IMG/VR virus record: IMGVR_UViG_3300022698_000267
Location: 186,001 to 250,000 of that record
Direction: 5' to 3' (one strand)
DNA length: 64,000 bases
The notes under the pieces are model-generated. The model did no database searches. It was given only the letters and a program-made list of their open reading frames with translations, and was not told the DNA's origin. A program made the translations under genes and the position numbers. This document shows, piece after piece, positions 17,263 through 64,000 of this stretch (its first letter is position 1; every line of letters begins with the position of its first letter).

Positions 17263-17288
17263 AATAAAAGATTTGGAGGGTTTTTCCT

Positions 17289-19183: not shown

Positions 19184-19195
19184 GAGGAATTTCAA

Positions 19196-19435
19196 ATGAT
19201 TATGTATTTTGTAACGGATTTTAATCCAAAGGATGCCGATTTATTTCATAGAGCCGGATCTGAAGACATTCTGGTTTCTTACTGGGTTTTGCAAAGTGGA
19301 AGGGATCCTGAGGGGAAAATCAAGGCCTTTTATGATCAGCTACATGGGTTAAAAGAACCAAAATTGCAATACACTGAAACTGGGGAAGTAATAAAGTCTA
19401 AAAGGGGGAATTCAGATGAAATCGAAGACGATTGA
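19196..19435 (+). CDS. Small protein, possibly the detached N-terminal segment of the TGT-like enzyme
   Basis: MYFV....L..AG...ILVSYW pattern; GGAGG RBS. Confidence 0.5.
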   Translation: MIMYFVTDFNPKDADLFHRAGSEDILVSYWVLQSGRDPEGKIKAFYDQLHGLKEPKLQYTETGEVIKSKRGNSDEIEDD

Positions 19436-19595
19436 AGAAATTCGTAAAGAGATTCGTGAGCTTGAAGAATTAAGAGATTCTGGAAATCCTCCTTCTGATG
19501 AAATTTTTGAAAAATTGGATTCTTTATACAATCAAGAACTGAAACTGTTGGCTACACATATTGATAAGAAGGAGGATAGTTCTAATGAAAGTTAA
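19416..19595 (+). CDS. Small coiled-coil protein (59 aa; below the ORF-track cutoff)
   Basis: Hand-translated MKSKTIEEIRKEIRELEEL...SSNES*; fills the gap and overlaps both neighbours. Confidence 0.6.
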   Translation: MKSKTIEEIRKEIRELEELRDSGNPPSDEIFEKLDSLYNQELKLLATHIDKKEDSSNES

Positions 19596-24288: not shown

Positions 24289-24844
24289 AGTGGCAGATGT
24301 TGACACAGATTCCTACGAATTTATGCAAACTACCTATAAAGAAGATCTCTTTATAGATAAGTATAATTTAGATATCGAGTGGTTGAAACAGCCTATGTTA
24401 TTTGTTAAATGGGCTGAAAGGTGGGCGGAGGCTGTAGAAAGGAGGGATAGAGCCAAGCAGTACTTAGAAGTTATTAAAGCGGAGATGTATACGAAGATCA
24501 AGAAAGATCCAGATGTGTATGGACTTCCGGATAAACCAACGGAAGGTGCAACTAATGCAATAGTTACCAAAAGTAAAAAATACAGATCAGCCTTCGAAGA
24601 TTATTTGGATCTAAATGGTCAGGTTAATGTTTTGGCTAGCGCAAAAGAAGCTATGAACCATAAGAAAAGGGCTTTGGAATACGTTAGTCAATTGATGCTC
24701 GGAGGCTTTTATTCAAATCCGAATATTAAAGCCGAAGCAAGACAAAAAGTAGAAAATGAGAAAGGTTCAGAAATTAGAGGGCACATCAAAGACTCGAATA
24801 GGATGCAGGCGCGAAGCCAATTAACCGATACCGAGAATGAATAG
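24281..24844 (+). CDS. uvsY: UvsY-like recombination mediator
   Basis: Helical protein with DLFIDKYNLDIEW and KPTEGA segments; lies before the SSB. Confidence 0.55.
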   Translation: MNKVADVDTDSYEFMQTTYKEDLFIDKYNLDIEWLKQPMLFVKWAERWAEAVERRDRAKQYLEVIKAEMYTKIKKDPDVYGLPDKPTEGATNAIVTKSKKYRSAFEDYLDLNGQVNVLASAKEAMNHKKRALEYVSQLMLGGFYSNPNIKAEARQKVENEKGSEIRGHIKDSNRMQARSQLTDTENE

Positions 24845-28637: not shown

Positions 28638-28647
28638 AATACTAAAA
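28638..28647 (+). promoter_or_regulatory. Putative phage promoter motif AATACTAAAA
   Basis: Intergenic, upstream of the resolvase. Confidence 0.6.
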
Positions 28648-28689
28648 CCTTTTGAAAGAATTTCTTGTAATACTTCAATGGAGTTTCTG

Positions 28690-29303: not shown

Positions 29304-29335
29304 TTAAGTTATAAATATAAATGGAGGTTTTATTG

Positions 29336-31207: not shown

Positions 31208-31225
31208 ACAAGGAGGTGTTTTTAC

Positions 31226-31561
31226 GTGATTAATTTAGATAAAAATGATGATATCGATATTAAGGTTTCGATTATTGGTTTACCACAGAGTGGGAAGTCC
31301 ACAATAATTTATCTGCTAACAAGAGCATTACAGGATATTGGGATGAAAGTGACTGCTTATGATTCAGAACCATTAAAAAATCATGATTCCAATATTCATT
31401 TGAAATGTGAAGCTCTAAGAGGAAAAAAGATTTCTATTCATACCATAGCTTTGAAAAGCAAGGATTTTAGTAGCATGGCACCGGAAATGCAAGGTGTAGA
31501 GGCTCTTCGTGAAAGAGTTCGAGATTCTAAACGTAGAAGGGGTCCAACTGATACTTTTTAA
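31226..31561 (+). CDS. Mini P-loop protein (paralog A)
   Basis: IIGLPQSGKST Walker A in a 111-aa protein. Confidence 0.65.
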   Translation: MINLDKNDDIDIKVSIIGLPQSGKSTIIYLLTRALQDIGMKVTAYDSEPLKNHDSNIHLKCEALRGKKISIHTIALKSKDFSSMAPEMQGVEALRERVRDSKRRRGPTDTF

Positions 31562-31602
31562 AAAGAACAGGTTACTTTAACTATTGATTCTGGGGGGACA
31601 AA

Positions 31603-32556
31603 TTGGGAAAAAACAATGGTAGAATTCTAAAAATTATTGATGGTTCAGCTAATACTCCTTTGGTTGATGACATCTGTTTCAATTCTAATTTAATTGGTTC
31701 GGAAGTCAAAGATGTTGTTAGTACATTTTCCGATAAAGAAACTCAAATAGAAATCGAAGAAAATATGCGAGGTTGTGATGTATTTGTGATTCAACCTACT
31801 TCTTCACCAGCCAATGAACATTTGATGCAATTATATTTCATACTAGATGCTTTAAAAAGAAGTAATTGTTGGCGGGTTACGGCAGTTATTCCTTACTATG
31901 GTTATGGAAGACAGGATAAAAAGTTGAAGCCCAGAGTTCCAATCTCTGCCAAATCTGTAGCCAGTTTAATTGAGTTTGGTGGAGTTAATAGAGTCCTCAC
32001 TATGGATCTTCATGCTAATCAAATTCAAGGATTTTTTAATTGTCCAGTTGACAATTTATTTGCATCTTCCATATTTTTGCCTTATATGCGTAAGCATGTA
32101 GACCCAAATTCTGTGATAGTATCACCAGATGAAGGTGGAATTGCCAGGGCGGTTCATTACTCTAAAGCTTTAGGACTTCCTGCAGCAATGATTCATAAAT
32201 CAAGACTCATAGCAAATGAAGTTGACAAGATGATACTATTAGGTTCTGTAAGAAATATGCACGCAATCATTATCGATGATATGTGTGATACAGCAACCAC
32301 ACTTTGTAAAGGTGCTGCTATTTTAAAAGATGCTGGAGCATTAAGTGTGGAAGCTTTTGTAACACATGGTGTATTTTCCGGTAAGGCTTACGAAAAAATA
32401 GCAGATTCTGCCTTCGAGGTTGTTAATGTGACAGATTCAATAAAACAGTCGACTATTTACACAGAAAAAATCAATGTCATCTCTTGTGCAGACCTTTTTG
32501 CAAAAGCAATTTTGAATATTCATGATGAAACTTCAGTTAGTTGTCTCTTCGAGTAA
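31603..32556 (+). CDS. prs: Ribose-phosphate pyrophosphokinase
   Basis: FSDKE, PYYGYGRQDKK, DLHANQIQGFF, SPDEGG, DDMCDT. Confidence 0.95.
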   Translation: MGKNNGRILKIIDGSANTPLVDDICFNSNLIGSEVKDVVSTFSDKETQIEIEENMRGCDVFVIQPTSSPANEHLMQLYFILDALKRSNCWRVTAVIPYYGYGRQDKKLKPRVPISAKSVASLIEFGGVNRVLTMDLHANQIQGFFNCPVDNLFASSIFLPYMRKHVDPNSVIVSPDEGGIARAVHYSKALGLPAAMIHKSRLIANEVDKMILLGSVRNMHAIIIDDMCDTATTLCKGAAILKDAGALSVEAFVTHGVFSGKAYEKIADSAFEVVNVTDSIKQSTIYTEKINVISCADLFAKAILNIHDETSVSCLFE

Positions 32557-32561
32557 CAAAA

Positions 32562-32571
32562 AATACTAAAA
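32562..32571 (+). promoter_or_regulatory. Putative phage promoter motif AATACTAAAA
   Basis: Intergenic, upstream of mini P-loop B. Confidence 0.6.
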
Positions 32572-32602
32572 TTTATAGAAATTAATTTCAATGGAGGGTA
32601 GC

Positions 32603-32854
32603 ATGGGGAAAAAGGAGTTACAAATACTGATAATTGGAGAAGCTGGTAGAGGTAAATCTACAATGGCTAGAATTATTCAACATGCTTTACAAGATCGTGA
32701 GTTTGATGATGTAACTATTAAAGATGAAATTGTAGAAGGTGTTCCAGATTCTTTCAATGAGGACGTCAGTATGAATCTTCGTTGTGAGGCTATAAAGGAT
32801 CTTTCAGTACTCATTAAAACCAAACAGTCGGTGAAAGGAGGATTCAATGTTTAG
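32603..32854 (+). CDS. Mini P-loop protein (paralog B); start moved to ATG 32603
   Basis: IIGEAGRGKST; aligns with paralog A. Confidence 0.65.
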   Translation: MGKKELQILIIGEAGRGKSTMARIIQHALQDREFDDVTIKDEIVEGVPDSFNEDVSMNLRCEAIKDLSVLIKTKQSVKGGFNV

Positions 32855-33518
32855 AAAATTTGTTACAAGCAATACATTTATAGCTATAGTTTTAACTGTT
32901 ATAGCTATGGGAGTCTTTGCAGTAATGGATTTTTTCCCACGATTGAGTGCTTCAGTTTCTGAGAATTCTATTGAGAGACCTGACATGCTCTCAGAGGTTT
33001 TTTTTGAATCAGAGGTTCCATTTAGGCAAATTGGACCTCTTAGACAACCAGAAACGGATGATCAGAAAATAATACGTTTTTCCTCTATTATAGAAAAAAG
33101 GCAGCCTCGTTTGGATCCAGCTATAGCAGAACAGATTGCTAAGTGTACATTGATATCTTCCAAACGTTATGGATTCCCTCCGGAAATGATTCTTGCTTTG
33201 ATGAAAAGGGAATCTACATTTATTCCAACTTTAGTTTCTAGTGCAGGTTGTAAAGGTTTGATGCAAGTGTACCCTGAAAAGCATCTGAAGAAATTAAAAA
33301 GAAGAGGGATTTCTAAAGATTCACCAAAGATTTTTTACATCGCTCCAAATATTGATATTGGATGCGAAATTCTTAGGGAGTATTATGATTCTGCAAAAGG
33401 GAATGTTAAACAAGCCCTAAAACAGTATGTTGGTGGGAAACATGATACGTATCTAACCGATGTCACTGTGGAATTTACTTCCTTAATGTTGGAAAAGTTT
33501 GATTCTTCCAACATGTAA
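32847..33518 (+). CDS. SLT-family lytic transglycosylase with N-terminal membrane anchor
   Basis: RES catalytic Glu, GLMQV, NIDIG, AL..Y.GG. Confidence 0.88.
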   Translation: MFRKFVTSNTFIAIVLTVIAMGVFAVMDFFPRLSASVSENSIERPDMLSEVFFESEVPFRQIGPLRQPETDDQKIIRFSSIIEKRQPRLDPAIAEQIAKCTLISSKRYGFPPEMILALMKRESTFIPTLVSSAGCKGLMQVYPEKHLKKLKRRGISKDSPKIFYIAPNIDIGCEILREYYDSAKGNVKQALKQYVGGKHDTYLTDVTVEFTSLMLEKFDSSNM

Positions 33519-33530
33519 TAGGAGAAAATC

Positions 33531-33848
33531 ATGAATACCGATCGTATGACAAAAGATGAGAAGTCAATTCTTCTATATCTAGAATCCTGTGCAACCGATG
33601 ATATTGGTAGAATAGATTCTAGAAAGATTAATGATATCGATCTGGAAATAATGAAAAAATGGAATAAAAGTGGTTTTATTTCATTTGGAAGATTAAGATC
33701 TGCCGATATTAAATCTGGGAGTTTCAAAGCCACATGGGTTAAACTGTCTGATGAAGCTTGGGAAACTGCTTTCAAATTGCGAAAGGAAAGAGCTTTAAGG
33801 ATGGAGAAGAATTACCCTTATGAAAGGAAAGAGATAGGTGTTCTATAA
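33531..33848 (+). CDS. Hypothetical protein
   Basis: 105 aa, GGAG RBS. Confidence 0.65.
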   Translation: MNTDRMTKDEKSILLYLESCATDDIGRIDSRKINDIDLEIMKKWNKSGFISFGRLRSADIKSGSFKATWVKLSDEAWETAFKLRKERALRMEKNYPYERKEIGVL

Positions 33849-34320
33849 CACACCAGAAAAATTGGAACCTCTACTTTGGGCTGTGGAACAGACATGGGAA
33901 ATAACTCAAAGAGAGGATTATCATCCCGAAATTTATGTGCATCTGCACCTTCTACAATGTTTCTATATAGCTGTTAAGGAAACCAGAGACATAGATATTA
34001 TAGTTGCTGCCCTAGTTCATGATGTTGGAAAAGTTGGTGGTAGCCATGGACATGAAAAACGTTCTGTTGATATGCTGGAATGTCACTGTTCTGAGAAGAC
34101 CCTTTGGTTAATCGAACAACATATTAAAATTTGGTCTCTTTTAACAGGACAAATGAAGAAAAGGTCAAAGGTTCAGAATCTAATGTCACATCCATGGTTT
34201 CTAGATTTAATACTTCTGGCTAGAATTGATAAGATGGGAAGGAATTTGGGCAGGACAGTTTACTATGATAAAGAAGAGATTATCAACACCATCCTAGAAG
34301 CAAAAATCCATAATTCTTAG
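33838..34320 (+). CDS. HD-domain phosphohydrolase
   Basis: YHPE..VHLH and AALVHDVGK. Confidence 0.8.
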   Translation: MFYNTPEKLEPLLWAVEQTWEITQREDYHPEIYVHLHLLQCFYIAVKETRDIDIIVAALVHDVGKVGGSHGHEKRSVDMLECHCSEKTLWLIEQHIKIWSLLTGQMKKRSKVQNLMSHPWFLDLILLARIDKMGRNLGRTVYYDKEEIINTILEAKIHNS

Positions 34321-34322
34321 TG

Positions 34323-34364
34323 AATTCAAAAAATATTTGAATTAAATTCAAAAAAATACTATAT
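34323..34364 (+). promoter_or_regulatory. Alternating AATTCAAA/TTTGAATT repeats followed by AATACTATAT motif
   Basis: aattcaaa 34323-30, tttgaatt 34336-43, aattcaaa 34345-52, motif 34355-64. Confidence 0.5.
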
Positions 34365-34390
34365 TTCTATAAAATAAATGGAGAATAAGA

Positions 34391-35575
34391 ATGTTAACTT
34401 ATCGAGATAAACCAAAAGACTATAAAATATTTGGAATTCCAGGTGTGGATTTTGAGTACGAAGCTCTTGAACAGATGAATAAAGTTATGTCCATTCCTGT
34501 TAGCTTAGAAGGGGCTGTAATGCCTGACGCTCACGTTGGATATGGTATGCCTATTGGTGGAGTAGCTGCTTTAAAGGATGCAGTAAGTCCCAATTTCGTG
34601 GGATATGATATAGCTTGTCGAATGACTCTTACTATTTTGGATATTGACATTCCAGAACTTTTAAAGAATCGAGAACTTATAGCTGGACATATGTTAGCTT
34701 CTTCAAGTTTTGGGGTAGGATCTATTTCTAATCGAAGAACAGATCATCCAGTTATGTATTCTCCTCTATGGAAAGAGCTTTCACATCTTAAAGAGTTGCA
34801 GTCTTTGGCTGAGGAACAATTGGGAACCAGTGGATCTGGAAATCATTTCTTCAATGCTATGATAGGTCAGGTAGTAAATGAAGCAGATTGGTTACCTTTG
34901 AATGTTGGTGACAAATTTGTTGCTATTATGACACATTCTGGAAGTCGTGGAGTTGGTCATAAATTAGCTACTCATTATATTAAATTAGCAAAACAAGAAA
35001 CTAAGGCTATTGCCAAAGGAATTCCAAGAGATTATGAGTGGTTAGATATCAGAAAAGATTCTGGTCGTGAATATTTGAAAGTAATGTCTTTAATGGGTGA
35101 ATACGCGGAAGCAAATCATCAGATTATTCACGATTCTTTTCTGAAAAAGTCAGGATTAAAACAGATTGTTCGTTATCAAAATCATCATAATTTTGCTTGG
35201 GAAGGACCTAATGGAATAGTTATACATCGTAAGGGTGCAACCCCTGCTCAATTAGGACAGATTGGAATAATTCCAGGTTCAAGTGGAACAGCTTCTTATC
35301 TTGTTGAAGGAAGAGGAGAGGTCACTGGTTTATGTTCCTCAAGTCATGGTGCTGGTAGAAAGTTCAGTAGGAATGAAGCAAAGGCAAAGTATAAAAAGCA
35401 TATTGTCGATGCTCATATGAAAGATTACGATATTCTTGGTATTGGGATAAACAAAGATGAAACTTTGATGGCTTATAAGGATATTGAGCACGTTATGGAT
35501 TTACAAAAAGATCTTGTTTCTCCAGTAGCAAGAATGCTTCCAAAGGTTGTCATCATGGCTGGAAAAAGAAATTAG
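34391..35575 (+). CDS. rtcB: RtcB RNA ligase
   Basis: MPDAHVGYG.PIG, DIAC, GSGNHF, HSGSR, HHN, HRKGAT, SHGAGR, AYKDI. Confidence 0.95.
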   Translation: MLTYRDKPKDYKIFGIPGVDFEYEALEQMNKVMSIPVSLEGAVMPDAHVGYGMPIGGVAALKDAVSPNFVGYDIACRMTLTILDIDIPELLKNRELIAGHMLASSSFGVGSISNRRTDHPVMYSPLWKELSHLKELQSLAEEQLGTSGSGNHFFNAMIGQVVNEADWLPLNVGDKFVAIMTHSGSRGVGHKLATHYIKLAKQETKAIAKGIPRDYEWLDIRKDSGREYLKVMSLMGEYAEANHQIIHDSFLKKSGLKQIVRYQNHHNFAWEGPNGIVIHRKGATPAQLGQIGIIPGSSGTASYLVEGRGEVTGLCSSSHGAGRKFSRNEAKAKYKKHIVDAHMKDYDILGIGINKDETLMAYKDIEHVMDLQKDLVSPVARMLPKVVIMAGKRN

Positions 35576-35612
35576 ATTTTTTTTCAATAATTACCCGATT
35601 AAGTAAGTGAAA

Positions 35613-35622
35613 AATACTATAT
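35613..35622 (+). promoter_or_regulatory. Putative phage promoter motif AATACTATAT
   Basis: Intergenic, upstream of the vWA/PurA-like module. Confidence 0.5.
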
Positions 35623-35676
35623 ATAGAATATAGATTTTTTATTTACTATTTTAAATGTAAACGAAAGGAGAGAATC

Positions 35677-36060
35677 ATGGAAGAAAAAGACAAAAATGGA
35701 GCAGTAGCAACCAGCAATCCCTCAGCAGTAGTGGAGGTTCCCGGTGCCTTTATGTATTCCTTGAAAAGGAACAACAAGCAGATTCGGGATGACAGGGCCA
35801 TGGCCATCGCTGAGGACACTCAGCTTATCTACAAGCGGACCATGGAAGACCTGGAAGTCGCATTGAAGAGAATGCGACGGGAACAGGAAAATATGCTGGA
35901 TTTGTCACCCACCGACGCCCGGAGCCTGGTTTTGGCAAGCGATTTCGATTCCAAGGAATACGTCAACAAAGACGTGGAATTGGGAGTAAAAATCCGCAAT
36001 ACCGAAATCAAATTGGAAATTGCCAAGGCCCGATATGAATACCTGTTCGGCGAAGTGTAA
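35677..36060 (+). CDS. Coiled-coil hypothetical protein of the vWA/PurA-like module (GC ~50%)
   Basis: 127 aa; AAAGGAG RBS; GC visibly higher than the flanks. Confidence 0.8.
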   Translation: MEEKDKNGAVATSNPSAVVEVPGAFMYSLKRNNKQIRDDRAMAIAEDTQLIYKRTMEDLEVALKRMRREQENMLDLSPTDARSLVLASDFDSKEYVNKDVELGVKIRNTEIKLEIAKARYEYLFGEV

Positions 36061-36064
36061 ACCA

Positions 36065-36208
36065 ATGAAACCTTTTCGCAACATTCTCATAAAGTTCAAA
36101 GAGTTTGTTGCGAAAAAGTGGTTTCAATTTCGTTGTCCACATCAACATTTGCATGTATGGCCTCATATGTATGTATGTGATCGGTGTGGAAAAACTTTTA
36201 AAGATTAA
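36065..36208 (+). CDS. Small Zn-ribbon-like protein (47 aa); start moved to ATG 36065
   Basis: CPH...CDRC. Confidence 0.45.
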   Translation: MKPFRNILIKFKEFVAKKWFQFRCPHQHLHVWPHMYVCDRCGKTFKD

Positions 36209-36222
36209 AAAGGAGGATTAAA

Positions 36223-37092
36223 ATGGGTGGTGGAACATATTCATCAACAGCCAGAGCTACCAGGGCATTTCATTCTGGATATCATACGAAGTCGGCCCAA
36301 GAAATTTTTACCCAAAGAAACATCAACAATGCCATGAGCCCCTATGGTCTTGGGATTCGGGAATCCAGGGATTCAGAAGAGCATCCAAAATCATATCCGA
36401 TTATACTAGGTCTTGACGTAACTGGATCGATGGGAAGCGTTCCTCATTTTCTGGTAAAGGAAGGTCTTCCGAAAATCATGGATGGTATTATTGAAGCCGG
36501 AATTCCTGATCCTCAGGTTTTGTTTTTGGGGATTGGTGATCATCAAGTCGATGATGCTCCAATTCAAGTCGGCCAATTTGAAAGTTCGGATGAACTTCTG
36601 GATAAATGGTTGACCGATATTTATTTGGAAGGTGGGGGTGGTGCAAATGCCGGTGAAAGTTACTTTTTGGCCTGGTACGTTGCAGCCAAACACACTGAAA
36701 CGGACAGTTTTATAAAACGTCAACAGAAGGGCATCCTTTTCACAATCGGTGATGAGCCAGATCTGCGTACTTTTTCTGGAAAGTCTGCAAAAAATATATT
36801 TGGTGCTGGTGAATATGCCAAAGAGTATTCGGACTTTGCATTGTTGGAAGAAGCAATGTTGACTTACAATGTATTCCATATCAATATCAATGAAACCAGT
36901 TCCGGTTCCAGAAGAATGGTCCAAGATGGATGGAAACAAATTCTGGCAGACAACGCTTTATTTGCGAATCGGAGGGAAGATGTTGTTGGAATCATTACCG
37001 ATAAGATTGTCGAAATTTACAAGGCCACAGAAACGGCGCCGACCATTGTACCGGAAGAGTACGTCGAAACATCAGTAGAGGAAATGCTGTGA
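36223..37092 (+). CDS. vWA-domain protein
   Basis: MIDAS-like DVTGSMG, GGGG, IGDE; MGGG start. Confidence 0.85.
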   Translation: MGGGTYSSTARATRAFHSGYHTKSAQEIFTQRNINNAMSPYGLGIRESRDSEEHPKSYPIILGLDVTGSMGSVPHFLVKEGLPKIMDGIIEAGIPDPQVLFLGIGDHQVDDAPIQVGQFESSDELLDKWLTDIYLEGGGGANAGESYFLAWYVAAKHTETDSFIKRQQKGILFTIGDEPDLRTFSGKSAKNIFGAGEYAKEYSDFALLEEAMLTYNVFHININETSSGSRRMVQDGWKQILADNALFANRREDVVGIITDKIVEIYKATETAPTIVPEEYVETSVEEML

Positions 37093-38240
37093 TATCAAAA
37101 GCCGTTATTGATTGCGGATTTGGAGATGCTGGCAAAGGAAAAGTTGTAAGTTACCTTTGTCAGCATTTCAGTAATCCTTTGGTAATTCGTTTTTCTGGTG
37201 GACAGCAGGCTGCTCATCATGTCGTGCTGCCTGACGGTCCAGACCACGTTTTTTCCAATTTTGGTAGTGGTACCCTCCAGGGAGTTCCCACCTATTGGGC
37301 TAAATATTGTACAGTGGATCCAGTAGGAATTTTAAATGAATTAGACGTTCTGAAAGAAAAAGGCATTGAACCGAAATTATACATTGATAGTCTTTGTCCT
37401 GTGACAACTCCGTTTGAGAAGTATTTGAATGTTGTTCAAAATCGGAGAAACGAACATGGCAGTTGTCAAGTCGGTGTTGGACCAACTTATCAACGAGAAG
37501 AGGACTTTTTTCATTTGCAGTTCAGGGATCTTTTCAATCCTACTGTTCTCAAAATCAAATTGGATATGTTTCAGAAACATTACTATCCAATGTCCAGATA
37601 TGCCCATTCTACATTACAGGCTGATGATTTTAAAAAAGCTGAAATTGAATTTTTCAGTTGTGTAGAAGAGTTGGTAAATTGTCCTAATGTAATTCGTGTT
37701 AGTCATTTTCCAAGTGGCTATGAAGATTACATTTTTGAATCTTCTCAAGGTCTTCTTTTGGATCAACATATTGGTTTTTTTCCTCATGTATCTAGGGGTA
37801 ACTTTGGAACTAAAAATATACTGAATATGGGGTTTAATAGTTTTTCAGTAACTTTGGTTACAAGGGCATATCAGACCCGTCATGGAAATGGACCAATGAC
37901 CAATGAGGACATTCCTCATAAAATAAAGGTAAATCCGTATGAAGAAAATCCCGATGACAATGCTCAAGGCAAATTTAGGATTTCTTTACTAGATTTGGAT
38001 TTACTAAAGTATTCTATATACAGTGACCCTTACATTTTGAGTTTTAGAACTGAAGTAGATTTAATAATTACCTGTTTGGACTTGATTGATGAAGATTACA
38101 GACTTACAGTAGATGGGAAAGTTTGTGAATTTAAAAATGAAAGGGATTTTGTTCAGTGTATAAAGTCTGAACTTGCGATTGACAAAGTGCGTCTCAGTAG
38201 GACACCATTTCCAGAAGTGGAGCTTTTCGACTCTTTATAA
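37089..38240 (+). CDS. Adenylosuccinate-synthetase-like (PurA-like) protein
   Basis: GFGDAGKG, RFSGGQQAAH, GVG, ESSQGLLLD, TRHGNGP. Confidence 0.85.
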   Translation: MISKAVIDCGFGDAGKGKVVSYLCQHFSNPLVIRFSGGQQAAHHVVLPDGPDHVFSNFGSGTLQGVPTYWAKYCTVDPVGILNELDVLKEKGIEPKLYIDSLCPVTTPFEKYLNVVQNRRNEHGSCQVGVGPTYQREEDFFHLQFRDLFNPTVLKIKLDMFQKHYYPMSRYAHSTLQADDFKKAEIEFFSCVEELVNCPNVIRVSHFPSGYEDYIFESSQGLLLDQHIGFFPHVSRGNFGTKNILNMGFNSFSVTLVTRAYQTRHGNGPMTNEDIPHKIKVNPYEENPDDNAQGKFRISLLDLDLLKYSIYSDPYILSFRTEVDLIITCLDLIDEDYRLTVDGKVCEFKNERDFVQCIKSELAIDKVRLSRTPFPEVELFDSL

Positions 38241-39513: not shown

Positions 39514-40689
39514 ATGAAATCCTTTATTAAAAGCAAATTAGACAACGATGCCTACATTTTTACCATGGCACAAGCTATCCTCCATAATTATCCAAATGTG
39601 GAAGTTGAATATGAATATGTTTGTCGTAACTTCGATGAGACTTTTGGAAAATATGAAATAGATCCTCATAAACTTAGGAAACTCATTATTCCACAATTGG
39701 ATCATTTAGCAGGATTATCAATGTCTTCATCCCAAAAAAGTTGGATGAATAATATTAGATATTACAAACCAGACTTTGTGCAATTCGTTTACGATTTGAA
39801 ATTAAAGCCACAATTGTATATTACCTGCGTTGTTTGGGATGATCAATTAAAGATTAATATCAAAGGTCCATGGATACAAACTATTTGGTTTGAAGTTCCT
39901 GTTTTGGCTATAATTAGTGAGAGTTATACTAGATTAATACATGAACGTGGGAATACAGAGGCTCTCTATAAAAATTTGGAAGATAAAATAAATTTGTATC
40001 GTGGAAAGTATAGTCATTTTTTCTTTGGTGACATGGGTACCAGAAGAAGAGATAGTTTCGAATTTCAACATCATGTTTGTAAAAGACTGAAAGGGATTCG
40101 AACTTTCACTGGAACTTCTAATATGCATATAGCTCATGCTTTAAGACTTAAAGCTCTTGGAACAATTGCACACCAATGGTTTCAAGCTCATCAACAACTT
40201 GCTCCATTAAAAGATAGCCAAAAAGTAGCTTTAGAAATTTGGGCTCAAGAATTTCGTGGAGATCTTGGAATAGCATTGTCAGATACTTTAGGATTCGATC
40301 AATTCCTAATTGATTTTGATATGTACTTCGCAAAATTATTCGATGGGTGTCGACATGATTCAGGTGATCCATATGAATGGACCGAGAAACTTATTCAACA
40401 CTATCAACAATTAGGAATTGATCCTAGAACTAAAAAAGCAATTTACAGCGATGGATTAAATTTTGAAGAGGCCAATAAGATATACGAAGCTTTTCGAGGA
40501 TCAATTCAAACTTCATTTGGAATAGGAACCTGGTTAACCAACGATGGCATCATTACACCTTTACAAATTGTCATTAAAATGATTAGATGTGCTGGTGGTC
40601 CGGTTGCTAAGATATCAGATAATCCCATTAAGAAGATTTGTGTTGATGAAAATTACTATAAATATCTTTGCAATACCTTTGTCAAATAG
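39514..40689 (+). CDS. pncB: Nicotinate phosphoribosyltransferase
   Basis: DMGTRRR, GTSN, GTIAHQWFQAHQQ, RHDSGDP, SDGL, FGIGT, VAKISD. Confidence 0.95.
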   Translation: MKSFIKSKLDNDAYIFTMAQAILHNYPNVEVEYEYVCRNFDETFGKYEIDPHKLRKLIIPQLDHLAGLSMSSSQKSWMNNIRYYKPDFVQFVYDLKLKPQLYITCVVWDDQLKINIKGPWIQTIWFEVPVLAIISESYTRLIHERGNTEALYKNLEDKINLYRGKYSHFFFGDMGTRRRDSFEFQHHVCKRLKGIRTFTGTSNMHIAHALRLKALGTIAHQWFQAHQQLAPLKDSQKVALEIWAQEFRGDLGIALSDTLGFDQFLIDFDMYFAKLFDGCRHDSGDPYEWTEKLIQHYQQLGIDPRTKKAIYSDGLNFEEANKIYEAFRGSIQTSFGIGTWLTNDGIITPLQIVIKMIRCAGGPVAKISDNPIKKICVDENYYKYLCNTFVK

Positions 40690-57380: not shown

Positions 57381-59666
57381 CTACGAACAGCTACTAAACA
57401 AACAATCTGGATTTATACAAGCTCCTCCTCTACATCCAACACTCTTAGTAAATGTGAACTTATTGCATTGAGGACAACGATCAAATCCTCCGGTTTCAGC
57501 TGTAAGTCCAGATAAGTTTGTGGTTACTGTTATTCCATTTTTCTCGAAGTGTTCATCTAAAATTGTGGCTATTAAATCAACAATTCCAGTTAATTTTCTG
57601 GAACGTTTTTCATTTTCATCCACTGTGAGAAACATTATCTCACCACCAGCACCTCTCATAGTGTCTGTTAATTTTTCTAATGGAACTCCCATCTGTAAAC
57701 TTTTACTAATCAATCTACCTATGGTATTCAACAACGTATTATCAAAATGTCCTTGATTTCCCATGGAAATAAAAACTTCCATGATTTTTTCATCAACATA
57801 ATTCCCAGTTACATAAATTCTTCCTCTTGGTGTATTTACTTCTAAAGTTTTGCCATAACGCAACATGGGTCTTTTTATTCCTTGAACTTCCACACCCTGT
57901 TTGCAATCTACAGAGGAAAAACTAACCGGCTGAGATTCTTTACTTCCATCTCTATATATGGTAATGCCCTTCAATTTCAAGTCATATGCTAATCTGTAGA
58001 TTTGATCTACATCTTCTTTGGTAGCTGAATTTGGAAGGTTTACTGTAGAAGATATTGATAACGTGATATTTTCTTGTGCTGCTGCCTGCATTTTTAATCT
58101 GTCTCGCCAGGAAATATCGTGTGCTACACAGAAGATTCTTTGTTCCTCTTCTTTAAATTCGTGAAGTCCTCTGATACTCCCATTGTTATTGCTGATCTTC
58201 TTTATTAAATCGTCTGTGATTTTAATCCCAGTTTTATTACAATATTTTTCGAATGTAGGATTCATAAAAGACCATTCTTCATCAGAATCGGATATAACTT
58301 TCCTCCAAGCTAGAGCAAATATTGGTTCAAAGGAGTAACTTGCATCCGCTGATATTGCCGTAGAACCGGTTGGAGCCAATGTTGTTACCGTACAATTGGC
58401 TATACCAGTTTGTTTTACTTTCTTGATGTCAGCTTCTGTCAACCCGTAATCTTTTAACAACTTATAAAATCGTTTAGCATCCTTTTTTGGTATACTAACT
58501 GTCACACCTTCTTCCTTTGCTAATTTTATGGAAGAACGAAAGGCTGTTTTTGTCATTATGGCTGTAATATTTCTCAACAAGTCCCTAGCATCTTTGGAAT
58601 TATATGGAATCTCCATTTTGTATAGAACATCTGAGAATCCCATAAGACCTAAACCAATAGGTCTATTTTTAAGCATTTGATCTTTAAACTTCTTGTTGGG
58701 AAAAGTATTTTTGTCGATGATTCTATTCAATAGACGAACGCCTACTTCAATATATTCTTCGAATTTTCCAAACAGCTCAAGATTTTTCGTCTCTTCATTA
58801 AAAAAACAGTTCAAATTTATATGTCCTAAATCACAGGCAGACCATGGAGGCAAACAAACTTCACCACATGGGTTTGTTGTTTCAATATCTCCTCTACTTG
58901 GAAATGGATTTAAACTATTGATTCTATCAATGAATAAGAGTCCAGGATCACCACTAGTCCAAGCAGAATCAACAATAGCTTCCCAAAGTTCTTTATACGT
59001 AAATTTCTCAATTTTTTTACCATCTAAAAGATCATTTGGAGACTCCAAAGGTATGCATTCATTGGAATCCACTTTTTCCATAAAATTTTTATCTACACAC
59101 ATAGAAATATTTATAGCACTGAATCTATCATTACAAACTTTACAGGTAGCAAAGTCTAAAGCATCTGGATGTGTGTATTTGAAAGAAGCTAGATTGGCAG
59201 CTCTTCTTGAACGTCCACCGGATTTGACTTGATCGGATATTGATTGTACTGTTTCTAGAAATGAGAGGGGGCCGCTGGAGTAGCCTCCTTCTTTAAGAGG
59301 TGATTTTGCTTCCCTAAGATTTGAAATTGGAATTCCAGCTCCACCTCCACCGGCATAGATTCTTGCACAAGTGGCCCACATTTCAATTATGGAATCCATA
59401 TCGTCTTCCAGACCTAGTAAAAAACAGGCTGCAAGATTGGGATTATCTACTATTCCTGCATTAACCATAGCAGGTGTATTTGGTCTAAAAATTTGATTTT
59501 GTAGCAGATAAAAGAATTCCTCTTCCTCTTCCTCCGTTATAGCTAAGAAGTTTGCAACTCTTCTATTACATTGTTCAATAGTTTCTACCGACTTCTGTGT
59601 CAATGGATCTCTTTTTAAATATAATTTTTCATAAGTTTTCTTGGCATTTTCTGAATATTCTGTCAT
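57381..59666 (-). CDS. nrdJ: Class II (adenosylcobalamin) ribonucleotide reductase with TSCPD-like tail
   Basis: FRPNTP, AACF, GGGAG, SGGRSRRAA, TNPCGE, CDLGHINL, LAPTGS, YRDGSK. Confidence 0.93.
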   Translation of the reverse strand: MTEYSENAKKTYEKLYLKRDPLTQKSVETIEQCNRRVANFLAITEEEEEEFFYLLQNQIFRPNTPAMVNAGIVDNPNLAACFLLGLEDDMDSIIEMWATCARIYAGGGGAGIPISNLREAKSPLKEGGYSSGPLSFLETVQSISDQVKSGGRSRRAANLASFKYTHPDALDFATCKVCNDRFSAINISMCVDKNFMEKVDSNECIPLESPNDLLDGKKIEKFTYKELWEAIVDSAWTSGDPGLLFIDRINSLNPFPSRGDIETTNPCGEVCLPPWSACDLGHINLNCFFNEETKNLELFGKFEEYIEVGVRLLNRIIDKNTFPNKKFKDQMLKNRPIGLGLMGFSDVLYKMEIPYNSKDARDLLRNITAIMTKTAFRSSIKLAKEEGVTVSIPKKDAKRFYKLLKDYGLTEADIKKVKQTGIANCTVTTLAPTGSTAISADASYSFEPIFALAWRKVISDSDEEWSFMNPTFEKYCNKTGIKITDDLIKKISNNNGSIRGLHEFKEEEQRIFCVAHDISWRDRLKMQAAAQENITLSISSTVNLPNSATKEDVDQIYRLAYDLKLKGITIYRDGSKESQPVSFSSVDCKQGVEVQGIKRPMLRYGKTLEVNTPRGRIYVTGNYVDEKIMEVFISMGNQGHFDNTLLNTIGRLISKSLQMGVPLEKLTDTMRGAGGEIMFLTVDENEKRSRKLTGIVDLIATILDEHFEKNGITVTTNLSGLTAETGGFDRCPQCNKFTFTKSVGCRGGACINPDCLFSSCS

Positions 59667-60556: not shown

Positions 60557-60586
60557 TTAGTTTTAATTTCCAAACTAAGTAAAACA

Positions 60587-60616
60587 TTGACAAAACTTCT
60601 AGGGAAGTTCTAGATT
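60587..60616 (+). promoter_or_regulatory. Possible sigma70-type promoter TTGACA-N18-TAGATT with a palindrome in the spacer
   Basis: aacttc-tagg-gaagtt at 60594-60609. Confidence 0.45.
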
Positions 60617-60641
60617 CATTTTCGATGTTTTGGAGGCAGAC

Positions 60642-63600
60642 ATGACATTCAGCAACATCTTATCCAATGTGCCATACAATATTAAAAACAGAAGTAATTA
60701 TGGTATAACCAAAGTTGAGACAGAAGATATTGTAGATGTTCCATACTTTCCGGCACAGAACTTAGTAGATACATCTGGTACTATCAATGTGTACAAACCT
60801 ATTGGATACCCCATACCATTTTTGGATAGTAATTCTTTAGAAAGATTATTCTACCTTCATAATAGAAATGATGTAAGATTTTTATTTACTGAGTTAGCCG
60901 ATGATGCTAGATATCTTAGATATTCTTTTATCGGCAATAGTTTTCCGCAAGGAAGAGATTATTTCAGTTACTCATTCGATGGTACAAAATTGTACATTTT
61001 TGGTGGTGATGCCAATGGGAGATGTTCAAATGACTTGTGGGAATATGATATAAATTCAAACAGCTGGAAGAACTTAAATTTTAGTATTGCCACACTCTCT
61101 GCCAATACTTGTCCTTCTAGAAGAAGAAAATCTAGCTGTATTGTTCACGGAACTTCTATTTGGATTTTTGGAGGAGAAACTGATATCCTCACTGTAAATT
61201 CAGAAGAAACTCGAACACTGCTAACTTTGAATGATCTATGGGACTATGATTTAAATTCTGGAGCTTGGACAAATTACGATTTAGATAGAGCTTTCCCTCA
61301 TAGACAAGGAAATATAGTTCATATCGACAGTGCATCTGTCAAAGTCTTTATAGAAGGAGGCTTAAATACAATAGGGCAACAGGAGCCTTTAGCAATATGG
61401 ACTTTAGATATTGCAACTGATACAGTATCGTATGAAGAAATAACAGCTCAGTTCGAACCATCTTACGAAAATGTTGTTCTTCTTATAGATGGTGTTATTC
61501 ATATTCAAGTAGGAACAGATTTATATAAATGGAATAATTCCACTTCTTTATTCGAAGTAGTTAAACAGGGAATATCTTGTATTAATCCCAATGGTAAGAA
61601 TTACTGGGTTGTTTCCGATGTATCTAAGAATTTCGGTGAAAATGCCAATATGGGAACCATGGAAATTTCACAAGCAGCTTTGTATTCCTATGGAGATTCT
61701 TTGCTTTCTACCAAAACAATGACTCTTCCTCCAGATTCTGGTCAAAGTATTCCAAGAATTAATGTGGATAATGTGCAAACATTTTTCTTTGGTGGATTAA
61801 CAGACGAAAATACGTTTAATGAAAGCACATACATTTTAAATCATACAACTTTAGATGTAGAAAAATATGATTTTGATTCTGATGAACGTCCAACAGAAAG
61901 AGTGTATACTTCATTAGCCTACGACAAATACAGAGGTAGGATTTGGTTGTTTGGAGGTTCAGATGGAACAAAATTCTACAATGATTTATGGTATTTTGAT
62001 CTAGGATTAAAGACATGGACTGAAGTTTTCGAAAATCAAGAAAACACAGATGAAGAAAATCCTGATTTTCCACAACCAAGATTTAAAACTGGACTAGCTG
62101 TTGTTGCCACCAATTATCTATATTTCCTTGGAGGATATTCAGATGTTAGAAGTTTTAACGATTTTTGGAGTTACAACATAACAACTCAGGAATGGAAAAA
62201 GCTTTTTGTGGTAGATAACATACCTTGGGGATCTATTTACAAAATCTTCGAATGGAGGGATAGACTCTGGTTATTCAATGGACAAAAATTGTACAGATTT
62301 TTCTTCGATAGAAAGCAATTTGTGCACTCTCCATTTCTAACAGTAAAGACGGAAAAAACCACCAATGATGAAAAGGTTTCAACAGGAATTATAGCCATTC
62401 TTGAATCTAAATCTTATATGGATATTCCTATAAATTGTGCAGTTGTTAATGGAAAATTACTGGTTCAGAATTCCAAAATCTCATTCCAAGTGGATTTAGA
62501 AAGCAAGGTGGTTACTGACTTAAATTTAGAGTTTGGAATGTCTACCAATGTTATCTGGTTAGACTCTTATTGGGGGATTGGTTCTGATTTGTTATCTTCC
62601 TATTATGTAAATGTTAGTGCTTTACAACCTCTTACGAAAAATCAAGTTCCTAATAGTTACTACTGTTCACAATTAAATCGAGTTCTTCCATCTGGTTTAT
62701 TTTTCTATGATTGGGGAAATGTGTATCCAGATAGCAATTTTATTTATCAGGACAGTTCTGGAACATTTACAATACAAAACAGAACAGATGCTTTAAATAA
62801 AGCTAAGTTGTTAGTTAATAAAACTGTTTCCTTTTGTGGAAAACAAACTGATTTTCCAAGTTTCGACTTTGGTGATGAAGAAGCTCTATGGAATGAAACT
62901 GTTGATGCTATGATAGACCCAAGAGTCTACCCATATGCTCCATGGTTTTTATATTCTGGTTACAACGTGGTTGGAAAAAGCGATACCTATACTGGTGCAC
63001 AAAGGGTTGTTTTTAATGAAAGTCTAGGAAAGATTTACATCATATATGATAATGGAAACACAATGAAGTTAAATCCTGAAGATGGAACGTTCTTCACTTA
63101 TTTCACTAGTATTTGGCCAGGTTCTGCAATTGGATACCATAAGAACAGGAACATTTTTTATATCTTTGGGGGGCTTCGAGAAGACTCAGAAGGAAATGCT
63201 ACCAGAAAAACTTACTTACAAAATGGCATGGAAGCAGCACCAATAGTTATTCAAGGAGAAAAGAATACAAGAACTGAAGTATCTCATCCTGGATTAATGC
63301 AATTTGATATGAACATAAATGAAATGAATCTGGGGTCTGTGGAAAATTACCTAAGAGACAAAGAGGTTGCTTCTGTTGATTACACACAAACTAAAGAACA
63401 TTTAGTTTCATTGATTGAAAAATACATAGAAGATGCAAGTAGCAATATTCTACCCGGAGGAATTGATGAAGCAAAACAAAAGATATATGAAGCAACACAA
63501 CCTATAATTGATGATATGTCACAATTCGATTTTGCTTTTGAAAATGGAACACGTCCACTTTCCAGAGCTTATGCAGCTAGTACCCAAGTTGGAAATTTCT

Positions 63601-64000
63601 TGTACGTTTTTGGTGGAGCTGATAGCTACACAGACTCTTGTATAGTAGTACAAGAGCCAGAACCTTATCATTGTTCTAAACCTGGAAGTTTATATAATCA
63701 ATTCGTAACAGCTAATAATCCTGAGGCAGAACCAGTATTTGATGAATATGAAGAAGGAAGAAGAGCATTTTCTTTCAATATGGAAACTAGAACGTGGACA
63801 GAATTAAATTTCACTTTGTATTGGCAGTACTTAGGTTCCGCTATTCCAAGTCCAGATGAAAGATTCATCTATATAGTTGGTGGATTTAAAGGATCAGATT
63901 GTACACAACCTTCTTCAGATATAATGGTCTATGATATACAAACCAATACTTATGAAGAGTTGTCAGGAATTCCAGAAACGTATGCTGGAAGAGCAAAGCC
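60642..64000 (+). CDS. Giant Kelch-repeat (beta-propeller) protein, 3'-truncated, >1119 aa; absent from the ORF track
   Basis: GGAGG RBS + ATG 60642; same frame at both ends and no stop-terminated ORF reported for it; at least 9 GG motifs (YIFGG, WIFGG, WLFGG, YFLGG, YVFGG, YIVGG), several followed by NDLWxYD. Confidence 0.9.
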   Translation, partial: MTFSNILSNVPYNIKNRSNYGITKVETEDIVDVPYFPAQNLVDTSGTINVYKPIGYPIPFLDSNSLERLFYLHNRNDVRFLFTELADDARYLRYSFIGNSFPQGRDYFSYSFDGTKLYIFGGDANGRCSNDLWEYDINSNSWKNLNFSIATLSANTCPSRRRKSSCIVHGTSIWIFGGETDILTVNSEETRTLLTLNDLWDYDLNSGAWTNYDLDRAFPHRQGNIVHIDSASVKVFIEGGLNTIGQQEPLAIWTLDIATDTVSYEEITAQFEPSYENVVLLIDGVIHIQVGTDLYKWNNSTSLFEVVKQGISCINPNGKNYWVVSDVSKNFGENANMGTMEISQAALYSYGDSLLSTKTMTLPPDSGQSIPRINVDNVQTFFFGGLTDENTFNESTYILNHTTLDVEKYDFDSDERPTERVYTSLAYDKYRGRIWLFGGSDGTKFYNDLWYFDLGLKTWTEVFENQENTDEENPDFPQPRFKTGLAVVATNYLYFLGGYSDVRSFNDFWSYNITTQEWKKLFVVDNIPWGSIYKIFEWRDRLWLFNGQKLYRFFFDRKQFVHSPFLTVKTEKTTNDEKVSTGIIAILESKSYMDIPINCAVVNGKLLVQNSKISFQVDLESKVVTDLNLEFGMSTNVIWLDSYWGIGSDLLSSYYVNVSALQPLTKNQVPNSYYCSQLNRVLPSGLFFYDWGNVYPDSNFIYQDSSGTFTIQNRTDALNKAKLLVNKTVSFCGKQTDFPSFDFGDEEALWNETVDAMIDPRVYPYAPWFLYSGYNVVGKSDTYTGAQRVVFNESLGKIYIIYDNGNTMKLNPEDGTFFTYFTSIWPGSAIGYHKNRNIFYIFGGLREDSEGNATRKTYLQNGMEAAPIVIQGEKNTRTEVSHPGLMQFDMNINEMNLGSVENYLRDKEVASVDYTQTKEHLVSLIEKYIEDASSNILPGGIDEAKQKIYEATQPIIDDMSQFDFAFENGTRPLSRAYAASTQVGNFLYVFGGADSYTDSCIVVQEPEPYHCSKPGSLYNQFVTANNPEAEPVFDEYEEGRRAFSFNMETRTWTELNFTLYWQYLGSAIPSPDERFIYIVGGFKGSDCTQPSSDIMVYDIQTNTYEELSGIPETYAGRAK

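What the first reader, a model, noticed from the sequence alone, without database searches (positions are those of the whole stretch)
60642..64000. Giant multi-propeller Kelch protein hidden from the ORF track
Seen: >1119 codons open to the window end, with Kelch repeats in at least three clusters separated by non-repeat spacers. I saw no signal peptide. Established: Kelch propellers are mainly eukaryotic/poxviral substrate adaptors or surface proteins and are uncommon in tailed phages. Inference: a large virion appendage or receptor-binding protein, or a host-protein adaptor.
Basis: partly seen in the sequence, partly recalled or inferred. Interest (0 to 1): 0.6.

Follow-up and report, generated by a model that had tools for sequence, protein, structure and literature searches.

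The report
Giant multi-propeller Kelch phage protein
A real 1820-residue gene of an uncultured 274-kb jumbo phage encodes several Kelch-type beta-propellers plus a family-specific C-terminal module; it is conserved across a small clade of such phages, sits with head and giant adhesin genes, and is most likely a virion-associated host-surface-binding appendage, a larger version of the small Kelch virion proteins already known in other jumbo phages.

Summary
An ORF starts at the ATG at window 60642, behind a GGAGG Shine-Dalgarno, and runs open to the window end. In the parent 273.6-kb virus record it continues to 1820 aa. It was missing from the ORF list only because it runs off the window.

Seven canonical Kelch repeats fall in clusters at aa 105-213, 420-521, 827-895 (weak) and 975-1108. 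AlphaFold models show at least three Kelch propellers, an inserted propeller-like domain and two C-terminal beta-sandwich domains. There is no signal peptide or membrane segment.

Twenty-two full-length orthologues (38-66% identity, constant length) occur in metagenomic phage contigs. None is in a cultured phage or a prokaryotic genome.

The gene travels with a 188-aa protein that is better conserved than it is. It lies near capsid, portal or protease genes and giant LamG adhesin-like genes, and shares an upstream motif with the capsid and portal genes.

My best reading (0.45) is a late, virion-associated adsorption accessory or appendage, analogous to PhiKZ gp298 and CBB_552. The evidence is circumstantial. 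Uniform conservation argues against a classical variable-tip receptor-binding fibre. I rate it a new variant of a known kind, of moderate interest.

The parts
60580..60587 (+). TAAAACAT, one copy of the upstream motif TAAAAC[CA]T, about 55 nt before the start codon
   Evidence: Of 56 genome occurrences, 18 are intergenic and lie 24-80 nt upstream of a same-strand gene. Composition-matched control words give a mean of 0.4. Carriers include the portal gene, the neighbours of the capsid gene, the capsid gene itself and the LamG giant. That it is a late promoter is my inference.
60587..60616 (+). Sigma-70-like site (TTGACA, 18 nt, TAGATT; 10 of 12 matches); weak and not conserved in the orthologous loci
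   Evidence: the region holds fewer such sites than shuffled sequence, so this is no evidence of function; the upstream alignment shows no conserved -10 element.
60632..60636 (+). Shine-Dalgarno GGAGG, 5 nt before the ATG
   Evidence: Read directly from the sequence.
60642..64000 (+). Coding sequence of the Kelch giant, residues 1-1119 of 1820. It continues beyond the window to L002:8104 (genome 252104).
   Evidence: There are 22 full-length orthologues.
60642..60776 (+). N-terminal peptide, aa 1-45. It is the most conserved stretch of the protein but is unstructured in the monomer model, so I take it to be a docking or anchor peptide.
   Evidence: Mean conservation is 0.80 over aa 1-40 against about 0.6 elsewhere. 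pLDDT is 26-34. No other protein of the genome shares it.
60807..61571 (+). Kelch beta-propeller 1 (about aa 56-310), with canonical repeats at aa 105-146 and 161-213
   Evidence: Pfam PF24681 and PF24981. The model is confident here, pLDDT 80-95. Foldseek matches LZTR1, KLHDC and KEAP1. Repeat HMM.
61599..62591 (+). Kelch beta-propeller 2 (about aa 320-650), with canonical repeats at aa 420-462 and 480-521
   Evidence: The partial phrog_16120 'virion structural protein' match covers aa 377-535.
62697..63521 (+). Middle region (about aa 686-960): beta-rich with one weak Kelch-like repeat (aa 827-895), then three long helices (aa 890-959). The model has low confidence here.
   Evidence: No Pfam match for aa 621-830. 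Secondary structure and pLDDT. Repeat HMM.
63522..64000 (+). Start of Kelch propeller 3 (aa 961 onward), with canonical repeats at aa 975-1056 and 1066-1108. Beyond the window lie the rest of this propeller, an inserted propeller-like domain (about aa 1176-1458) and two C-terminal beta-sandwich domains (about aa 1570-1700 and 1730-1815).
   Evidence: (Z up to 17.4 to KLHL7, FBXO42 and LZTR1; aligned ranges are discontinuous).

Best explanation
The gene encodes a late-expressed, virion-associated accessory protein of an uncultured jumbo-phage clade with a T4-type capsid. It is a large, acidic, monomer-like chain of at least three Kelch beta-propellers, one inserted propeller-like domain and two C-terminal beta-sandwich modules that may bind carbohydrate. 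I propose that the highly conserved, intrinsically unstructured N-terminal 45 residues dock it onto the particle. The propellers and C-terminal modules would then act as binding surfaces for host envelope components and assist adsorption, alongside the neighbouring giant LamG adhesin-like proteins. It probably works with the co-inherited 188-aa protein. Shown: the ORF, the propeller folds, the family, the synteny and the motif enrichment. Inferred: late expression, presence in the virion, N-terminal docking and host-surface binding.
For: (1) It is a real, conserved gene: 22 full-length orthologues at 38-66% identity and 1776-1942 aa, diverging at about the portal's rate (38-51% against 39-45%). 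(2) Position: on the circularised map it opens a rightward block made up of the Kelch gene, a 451-aa gene, an 80-aa gene, a 188-aa gene, a 176-aa gene, a 3620-aa LamG giant and a 3821-aa LamG giant. That block leads into the capsid, protease, terminase and portal genes. (3) Despite rearrangements, related contigs keep it next to virion genes. The portal is immediately upstream in L015. Capsid and portal lie 4-5 genes upstream in L004, with a LamG protein downstream. The prohead-protease homologue is nearby in L006. Giant genes lie adjacent in L024, L005 and L006. (4) It shares the position-specific upstream motif TAAAAC[CA]T with the capsid, the portal, their neighbours and the LamG giant. The strong sigma-70-like promoters are confined to the small-gene region at 112-155 kb. 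(5) Precedent: Kelch proteins are found in virions of other jumbo phages. CBB_552 was detected by mass spectrometry (PMC5259590). PhiKZ gp298 is a low-abundance virion protein required for adsorption to some hosts (PMC12676376). Fold matches include the 'virion structural proteins' of PhiPA3, Noxifer and Phabio, and there is a partial phrog_16120 match. (6) The conserved but unstructured N-terminus fits a docking arm. (7) The C-terminal tail gives leads to discoidin and CARDB/HYDIN-Ig adhesion-type domains.
Against: There is no direct evidence that the protein is in the virion or that it is expressed: no RNA runs and no cultured relative were found. Only a few genes carrying the upstream motif have a known function, so calling it 'late' is an inference. 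In this genome the immediate upstream neighbours are nucleotide-metabolism genes. Conservation is uniform along the protein with no variable tip, and the 1:1 orthology is unlike most host-range determinants. No tail genes could be located, so 'tail-associated' cannot be tested. The carbohydrate-binding assignment of the tail is below threshold. Kelch propellers are generic protein-binding modules.
Confidence: 0.45

Rival explanations
1. It is a non-virion, intracellular scaffold or assembly factor. The propellers would bind phage or host proteins inside the infected cell, for example as a chaperone or platform for assembling the giant LamG proteins or the head, or as a host-takeover adaptor.
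For: Kelch propellers typically mediate protein-protein binding; the closest solved folds are the substrate receptors LZTR1, KLHDC, KEAP1 and FBXO42. The whole length is conserved at a core-gene rate with no variable tip. The protein is strongly acidic, net charge about -92. An assembly factor would equally well explain the tight linkage to a very conserved 188-aa protein and the proximity to head genes and giants.
Against: There is no BTB, BACK, F-box or SOCS-type adaptor domain. At 1820 aa it is large for a chaperone. Kelch proteins of other jumbo phages have been detected in virions.
Confidence: 0.2
2. It is a classical receptor-binding tail fibre or spike: an N-terminal anchor with a distal, host-specific receptor-binding tip.
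For: It is large and sits in a cluster of adhesin-like giants. The N-terminus is conserved as in fibre anchors. The C-terminal beta-sandwich domains have discoidin- and Ig-like leads.
Against: The C-terminal 260 residues are as conserved (0.54-0.65) as the rest of the protein, and length is constant across 38-66% identity. There are no coiled-coil, beta-helix or collagen-like trimerisation elements apart from three helices at aa 890-959. The N-terminal motif is not shared with any other candidate fibre in the genome. The multi-LamG giants are better candidates for the variable RBPs.
Confidence: 0.15
3. It is a carbohydrate-active enzyme, either a sialic-acid mutarotase (as JGI names some members) or a galactose-oxidase-like enzyme, acting on host surface sugars.
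For: JGI names two orthologues 'N-acetylneuraminic acid mutarotase'. There are weak Pfam NANM and NCBIfam mutarotase hits. Galactose oxidase homologues appear among the fold matches.
Against: All mutarotase models score far below their cut-offs: 41 against 243, 30 against 416, 27 against 256 bits, and NANM 30.9 against 45. These hits reflect the shared Kelch fold alone. There is no Glyoxal_oxid_N match. Galactose oxidase matches (Z 10-14) rank below the protein-binding Kelch domains (Z 16-17).
Confidence: 0.05

Closest known systems
PhiKZ gp298 (PHIKZ298), a Kelch-domain low-abundance virion protein conditionally required for adsorption (PMC12676376)
   Same: It is a Kelch beta-propeller protein of a jumbo phage. 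It is annotated as a virion structural protein and implicated in adsorption or receptor access, which makes it the functional model for the reading I propose.
   Different: It has 335 aa and a single propeller, against 1820 aa with several propellers and extra domains here. Sequence similarity does not go beyond the Kelch motif: BLASTP E is 0.2 and hhalign probability 2%. It comes from a different phage lineage (a nucleus-forming phiKZ-like phage, against the T4-type capsid here).
Pectobacterium phage CBB Kelch-like proteins CBB_550/552/554 (PMC5259590) and the 'virion structural proteins' of PhiPA3, Noxifer and Phabio (phrog_16120)
   Same: These are Kelch propeller proteins in jumbo phages. 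CBB_552 and the phiKZ-like proteins were detected in virions. They give fold-level matches and a partial PHROG match at E 3.6e-9.
   Different: They are much smaller (about 285-700 aa). The similarity is confined to one propeller, aa 377-535. tblastn finds no hit at E 1e-5 in 50,697 phage records. They lack the N-terminal peptide and the C-terminal module of this family.
Eukaryotic and poxviral Kelch substrate receptors (LZTR1, KLHL/KBTBD, KEAP1, KLHDC2/3/10, FBXO42)
   Same: They are the best structural matches for each propeller, with Z up to 17.4 and Foldseek E about 1e-13, and the best PDB sequence match is LZTR1 at E 2e-19.
   Different: This protein has no BTB, BACK, F-box or BC-box, so nothing links it to a ubiquitin ligase. 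It is a bacterial virus protein with several propellers in one chain.
Galactose oxidase and NanM/YjhT Kelch enzymes
   Same: They share the Kelch propeller. Galactose oxidase also combines a propeller with discoidin-like and Ig-like beta-sandwich domains, as this protein may.
   Different: The domain order differs. Family models score far below their cut-offs. No catalytic signature was identified.

Membership tests
Kelch-repeat beta-propeller superfamily | Kelch sequence repeats scoring above the curated thresholds | tested here: met
   PF24681 scores 188.9 bits (cut-off 50), PF24981 119.9 (50), Kelch_1 86.7 (20.1), with others also above threshold. The repeat HMM finds 7 canonical repeats.
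Kelch-repeat beta-propeller superfamily | Beta-propeller fold built of four-stranded blades | tested here: met
   The AlphaFold2 models are confident at aa 41-570 and 970-1150. They match solved Kelch domains with Z 13-17 and rmsd 2.1-3.9 and Foldseek E about 1e-13.
BTB-Kelch / poxvirus Kelch-like substrate adaptors | An N-terminal BTB/POZ (and BACK) domain linking the propeller to a cullin ligase | tested here: not met
   No BTB or BACK family matches in the Pfam scans of the whole protein or its segments, even at E up to 1. The N-terminus is a family-specific peptide.
NanM/YjhT sialic-acid mutarotase (the JGI name for two orthologues) | A score above the curated family cut-offs for the single six-bladed enzyme | tested here: not met
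   TIGR03548 scores 41.3 against 243.2, PRK14131 30.2 against 416, TIGR03547 26.7 against 256.35, and Pfam NANM 30.9 against 45.
Galactose oxidase / glyoxal oxidase (AA5) | A copper-radical active site (Tyr-Cys cross-link, His/Tyr ligands) and a match to the family model | tested here: inconclusive
   There is no Glyoxal_oxid_N hit. Fold matches have Z 10-14, below the protein-binding Kelch domains. Active-site residues were not mapped.
Phage receptor-binding tail fibre | A conserved N-terminal anchor with a divergent distal (C-terminal) receptor-binding end | tested here: not met
   The N-terminus is conserved (0.80), but so is the C-terminal tail, at 0.54-0.65 and similar to the whole protein. 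Length is constant among the 20 orthologues.
Phage receptor-binding tail fibre | Homotrimeric fibrous architecture | not tested
   The monomer models show globular propellers and only three helices at aa 890-959. The single complex job went to a different question.
Jumbo-phage virion Kelch proteins (PhiKZ gp298, CBB_552, phrog_16120) | Sequence homology beyond the generic Kelch motif | tested here: not met
   Against gp298, BLASTP E is 0.2 and hhalign probability 1.95%. phrog_16120 matches only aa 377-535. tblastn against phages finds nothing.
Jumbo-phage virion Kelch proteins (PhiKZ gp298, CBB_552, phrog_16120) | Physical presence in purified virions | not testable with these tools
   The phage is uncultured. 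Only context is available.

The most novel reading that the evidence does not exclude
The Kelch giant, the ultra-conserved 188-aa protein and the fast-evolving 451-aa 'SER-repeat' protein together build a virion appendage that has not been described before. It would be a head-, neck- or tail-attached adhesion organelle made of tandem beta-propellers rather than trimeric fibres or beta-helices, specific to an uncultured clade of soil and environmental jumbo phages with T4-type capsids.
Probability: 0.15. Interest if true: 0.7.

Novelty: new variant of a known kind. Interest (0 to 1): 0.42.

Why it matters
Kelch propellers in phage virions are only now gaining a function: PhiKZ gp298 acts as a conditional adsorption factor. 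This family shows the same building block expanded into an 1820-residue, multi-propeller, core-like protein in a lineage with no cultured member. If it is a particle component, it adds a non-fibrous architecture to the known range of phage host-recognition or particle-decoration devices. Its conserved N-terminal peptide and its 188-aa partner give concrete handles for structural work. If it is instead an intracellular scaffold, it would be an unusual case of a phage using a eukaryote-style protein-binding fold for assembly or takeover. In either case it serves as a marker gene for this jumbo-phage clade.

Tried and rejected
(1) Complex prediction with Kelch aa 1-340 and the 188-aa protein returned 'no answer' (score 0.00). 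This counts neither for nor against binding.

(2) The C-terminal tail (aa 1555-1820) stayed unassigned. The profile search against PDB sequences found nothing. hhalign against a Kelch+HYDIN-Ig protein found nothing. Pfam scans of all 20 members gave only sub-threshold CARDB and F5/8-type-C hits. Atlas feature scores were 0.76-0.81, a lead only. Structure searches of the 921-residue model were dominated by the propellers, so the tail was barely tested.

(3) PHROG scans of the other genes carrying TAAAAC[CA]T were almost all blank, so their class could not be confirmed.

(4) Pfam searches of the genome for sheath, T4 tube and Terminase_6N found nothing. The large terminase was found by PHROG instead.

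(5) A literature hit with nine mentions of 'Kelch' near 'portal/neck' turned out to be an author's surname.

(6) The sequencing-run search found one soil metagenome with a word share of 0.07 and no RNA runs. Read laying was therefore not used, and no expression evidence was obtained.

(7) The sigma-70-like site upstream of the gene is not above chance and is not conserved.

(8) The PurZ reading of window 37089-38240 was rejected: 19 bits against a cut-off of 300.

Full report
**Observation**

The ORF is real. The frame is open from TTG 60630 / ATG 60642 to base 64000, which is 1119 codons counted from the ATG. ATG 60642 lies 5 nt downstream of GGAGG at 60632-60636.

The window is bases 186001-250000 of a 273,563-bp IMG/VR virus record that CheckV rates 97% complete, with GC about 34%. 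I fetched the downstream DNA as L002, where window coordinate = L002 coordinate + 58000. The ORF ends at L002:8104 and gives a protein of 1820 aa, P0002.

At this base composition the probability of 1820 stop-free codons is about 1e-60.

**Domain anatomy**

Kelch families score far above Pfam thresholds. Segment scans place them at about aa 100-270, 380-530, 975-995 and 1040-1135. Residues 621-830 and 1301-1820 match no family.

An iterative repeat HMM trained on the protein's own repeats finds seven canonical Kelch repeats. They lie at aa 105-146, 161-213, 420-462, 480-521, 827-895 (weak), 975-1056 and 1066-1108. The layout is conserved, with 6-8 repeats in all 20 family members.

I made AlphaFold2 models of both halves, each with a 20-sequence alignment.
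- aa 41-570 folds confidently into propeller blades, with pLDDT mostly 80-95.
- aa 970-1150 forms a third Kelch propeller. The aligned ranges suggest it is closed by a distant segment at about aa 1485-1510.
- aa 1176-1458 is an inserted domain that aligns with other propeller classes.
- aa 1570-1700 and 1730-1815 form two all-beta domains at the C-terminus.

The closest solved structures are protein-binding Kelch domains: KLHL7, FBXO42, KBTBD4, LZTR1 and KEAP1, with Z 15-17. Foldseek gives E about 1e-13, and by sequence LZTR1 scores E 2e-19.

No BTB, BACK or F-box domain is present. There is no signal peptide or TM segment, and the net charge is about -92.

The C-terminal tail has only leads. 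Atlas look-alikes with discoidin and HYDIN-Ig domains score 0.76-0.81. CARDB and F5/8-type-C matches are below threshold. The profile search against the PDB found nothing.

**Family**

The word-index search found 22 full-length orthologues of 1776-1942 aa, 38-66% identical and covering 100% of the query. All are metagenomic. Two fragments were also found.

Conservation averages 52% column identity and is spread over the whole length. The N-terminal 40 residues are the most conserved (0.80), and the C-terminus is no more variable than the rest. The monomer model nevertheless leaves this N-terminal peptide unstructured, with pLDDT about 30. No other protein of the genome shares it.

An exhaustive profile search with the unannotated C-terminal 520 residues covered 1.84 billion representatives and returned only 25 proteins. 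Nearly all carry the match at the C-terminus of a 1600-2170-aa protein, so the module is specific to this family.

No relative appears in 50,697 phage records by tblastn or in the prokaryotic species-representative genomes. The genome holds no paralogue, although one related contig carries two copies 4 kb apart.

**The phage**

The capsid protein is T4 gp23-like, at genome 8466-9569 on the minus strand. The portal is T4-like, at 22848-24599. The large terminase lies at 20684-22756 on the minus strand.

The capsid protein is only 25-27% identical to those of Salicola SCTP-2 and the RaK2-like jumbo phages, so this lineage has no cultured member. The window itself mostly encodes replication and nucleotide-metabolism functions.

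The last ORF of the record reads through the record junction once an 8-base terminal overlap is removed, for a total of 3821 codons. The record is therefore effectively circular or permuted.

**Context**

The Kelch gene is transcribed divergently from a thymidylate-synthase-like gene and a ribonucleotide reductase gene. It opens a rightward block consisting of the Kelch gene, a 451-aa gene, an 80-aa gene, a 188-aa gene and a 176-aa gene. Two giants of 3620 and 3821 aa follow, with 8 and at least 9 LamG domains plus DUF2341. The block leads into the head module.

Gene order differs among related contigs, but the associations persist.
- The Kelch, ~406-aa and 188-aa trio recurs in L005, L006, L014 and L015.
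- In L023 the Kelch homologue is only 26% identical, yet the 188-aa homologue (46% identical) follows it directly.
- The portal is immediately upstream in L015.
- Capsid and portal lie 4-5 genes upstream in L004, with a LamG protein downstream.
- The prohead-protease homologue is nearby in L006.
- Giants lie adjacent in L024, L005 and L006.

The 188-aa protein is 71-81% identical where the Kelch protein is 46-52% identical. The Kelch protein diverges at about the portal's rate.

**Regulatory signals**

K-mer enrichment in upstream intergenic regions reveals a strong extended sigma-70-like promoter, AGTACTTGACA ... TATACTAAA. It is confined to the small-gene region at 112-155 kb.

A second word, TAAAAC[CA]T, has 18 of its 56 occurrences in intergenic positions 24-80 nt upstream of a same-strand gene. 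Control words of the same composition average 0.4. Carriers include the portal, the 858-aa neighbour of the capsid gene, several genes around the capsid gene, the capsid gene itself, the Kelch gene and the LamG giant.

I read this as a shared, probably late, promoter element. That is an inference, because most of the other carriers have no known function.

**Literature**

Kelch proteins are already known in jumbo phages. CBB_550, 552 and 554 are examples, with CBB_552 detected in virions, and EL and phiR1-37 also carry such proteins (PMC5259590). Erwinia jumbo phages have them too (PMC7760394).

PhiKZ gp298 is a Kelch protein of low abundance in the virion. Transposon mutants lacking it fail to adsorb to particular hosts (PMC12676376). 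gp298 shares only the generic Kelch motif with this protein.

Fold matches in the viral library include the 'virion structural proteins' of PhiPA3, Noxifer and Phabio, and the CBB Kelch-like protein.

**Interpretation**

The most likely reading (0.45) is a late, virion-associated accessory protein. It would dock through its conserved N-terminal peptide and present propeller and beta-sandwich binding surfaces that assist adsorption, together with the LamG giants and probably the 188-aa protein.

The rivals are:
- an intracellular assembly or takeover scaffold (0.2);
- a classical variable-tip receptor-binding fibre (0.15), disfavoured by the uniform conservation;
- a mutarotase or oxidase-type enzyme (0.05), whose family models fail their cut-offs by a wide margin.

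The one complex prediction, Kelch aa 1-340 with the 188-aa protein, gave no verdict and is not used as evidence.

**Novelty**

Kelch proteins in jumbo-phage virions are a known kind. This family is a new variant of it. It is five times larger, carries several propellers, a family-specific N-terminal peptide and C-terminal module, is conserved like a core gene, and is restricted to an uncultured clade. Interest is moderate.

Noticed in passing
L002:9786-10352 (genome 253786-254352), just beyond the window: This 188-aa protein has no Pfam, PHROG or NCBIfam match, yet it is the best-conserved gene of the cassette: 71-81% identical where the Kelch giant is 46-52%, and 46% where the giant is 26%. 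It always lies downstream of the Kelch gene. Atlas look-alikes are viral hypothetical clusters only.
   Followed up: partly
L002:8111-9466 (genome 252111-253466): This 451-aa protein directly follows the Kelch gene. It has many short repeats centred on SER/TER/SDR-like triplets in a beta-rich sequence. It is orthologous across loci but fast-evolving (23-27% identity) and matches no family.
   Followed up: partly
Genome 254936-265798 (L011), and 266201 through the record end to 4111 (L003, L012): Two giant proteins of 3620 and 3821 aa carry 8 and at least 9 Laminin_G_3 domains plus DUF2341. The second reads through the record junction when an 8-base terminal overlap is removed, and a Ser-rich linker sits at the junction. 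The 'linear' record is therefore effectively circular or permuted.
   Followed up: partly
Genome 112-155 kb (outside the window): About 22 strong extended sigma-70-like promoters (AGTACTTGACA ... TGTTATACTAAAA) cluster in front of small genes. Many are accompanied by a second motif, TTTAAGTGGTTGGGGA. This looks like an early-gene region transcribed by the host polymerase.
   Followed up: partly
Genome-wide, e.g. window 60580-60587 and 28643-28650; genome 22818, 12219, 266158: The word TAAAAC[CA]T is strongly position-specific: 18 of its 56 copies lie 24-80 nt upstream of same-strand genes, against 0.4 for control words. Carriers include the portal, the capsid-region genes, the Kelch gene and a LamG giant. 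It is a candidate late or middle promoter element. The capsid gene also has the T4-late-like TATAAATA 23 nt before its start.
   Followed up: partly
Window 37089-38240 (+): This adenylosuccinate-synthase-like gene hits phrog_1211, the PurZ-type PHROG label. By NCBIfam it is far below both the PurA and PurZ cut-offs (PurZ 19 bits against 300), so there is no support for a 2-aminoadenine genome.
   Followed up: yes
Genome 12234-19934 (-) and 30826-38154 (-): Two further giant ORFs (2566 and 2442 aa) lie inside the head/packaging region. They have essentially no family match; the second has one sub-threshold LamG hit. The 2566-aa protein has a 42%-identical homologue near the Kelch gene in L006.
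   Followed up: no
Whole genome: No tail sheath (PF04984), T4 tail tube (PF06841) or Terminase_6N Pfam match was found. The large terminase was recognised only by PHROG, at genome 20684-22756 (-). The tail module of this lineage is too divergent to recognise, so the tail morphology is unknown.
   Followed up: partly
JGI contig of 115,282 bp carrying P0007 and P0015 (no DNA available): One related phage carries two full-length paralogues of the Kelch giant (1859 and 1942 aa) about 4 kb apart, separated by the usual small cassette genes.
   Followed up: no
Window 34391-35575, 29321-31207, 39514-40689, 57381-59666: The window encodes an RtcB RNA ligase, an NAD-dependent DNA ligase, a nicotinamide phosphoribosyltransferase-like protein and a ribonucleotide reductase with a C-terminal TSCPD domain. 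This is a typical auxiliary set for a jumbo phage.
   Followed up: no
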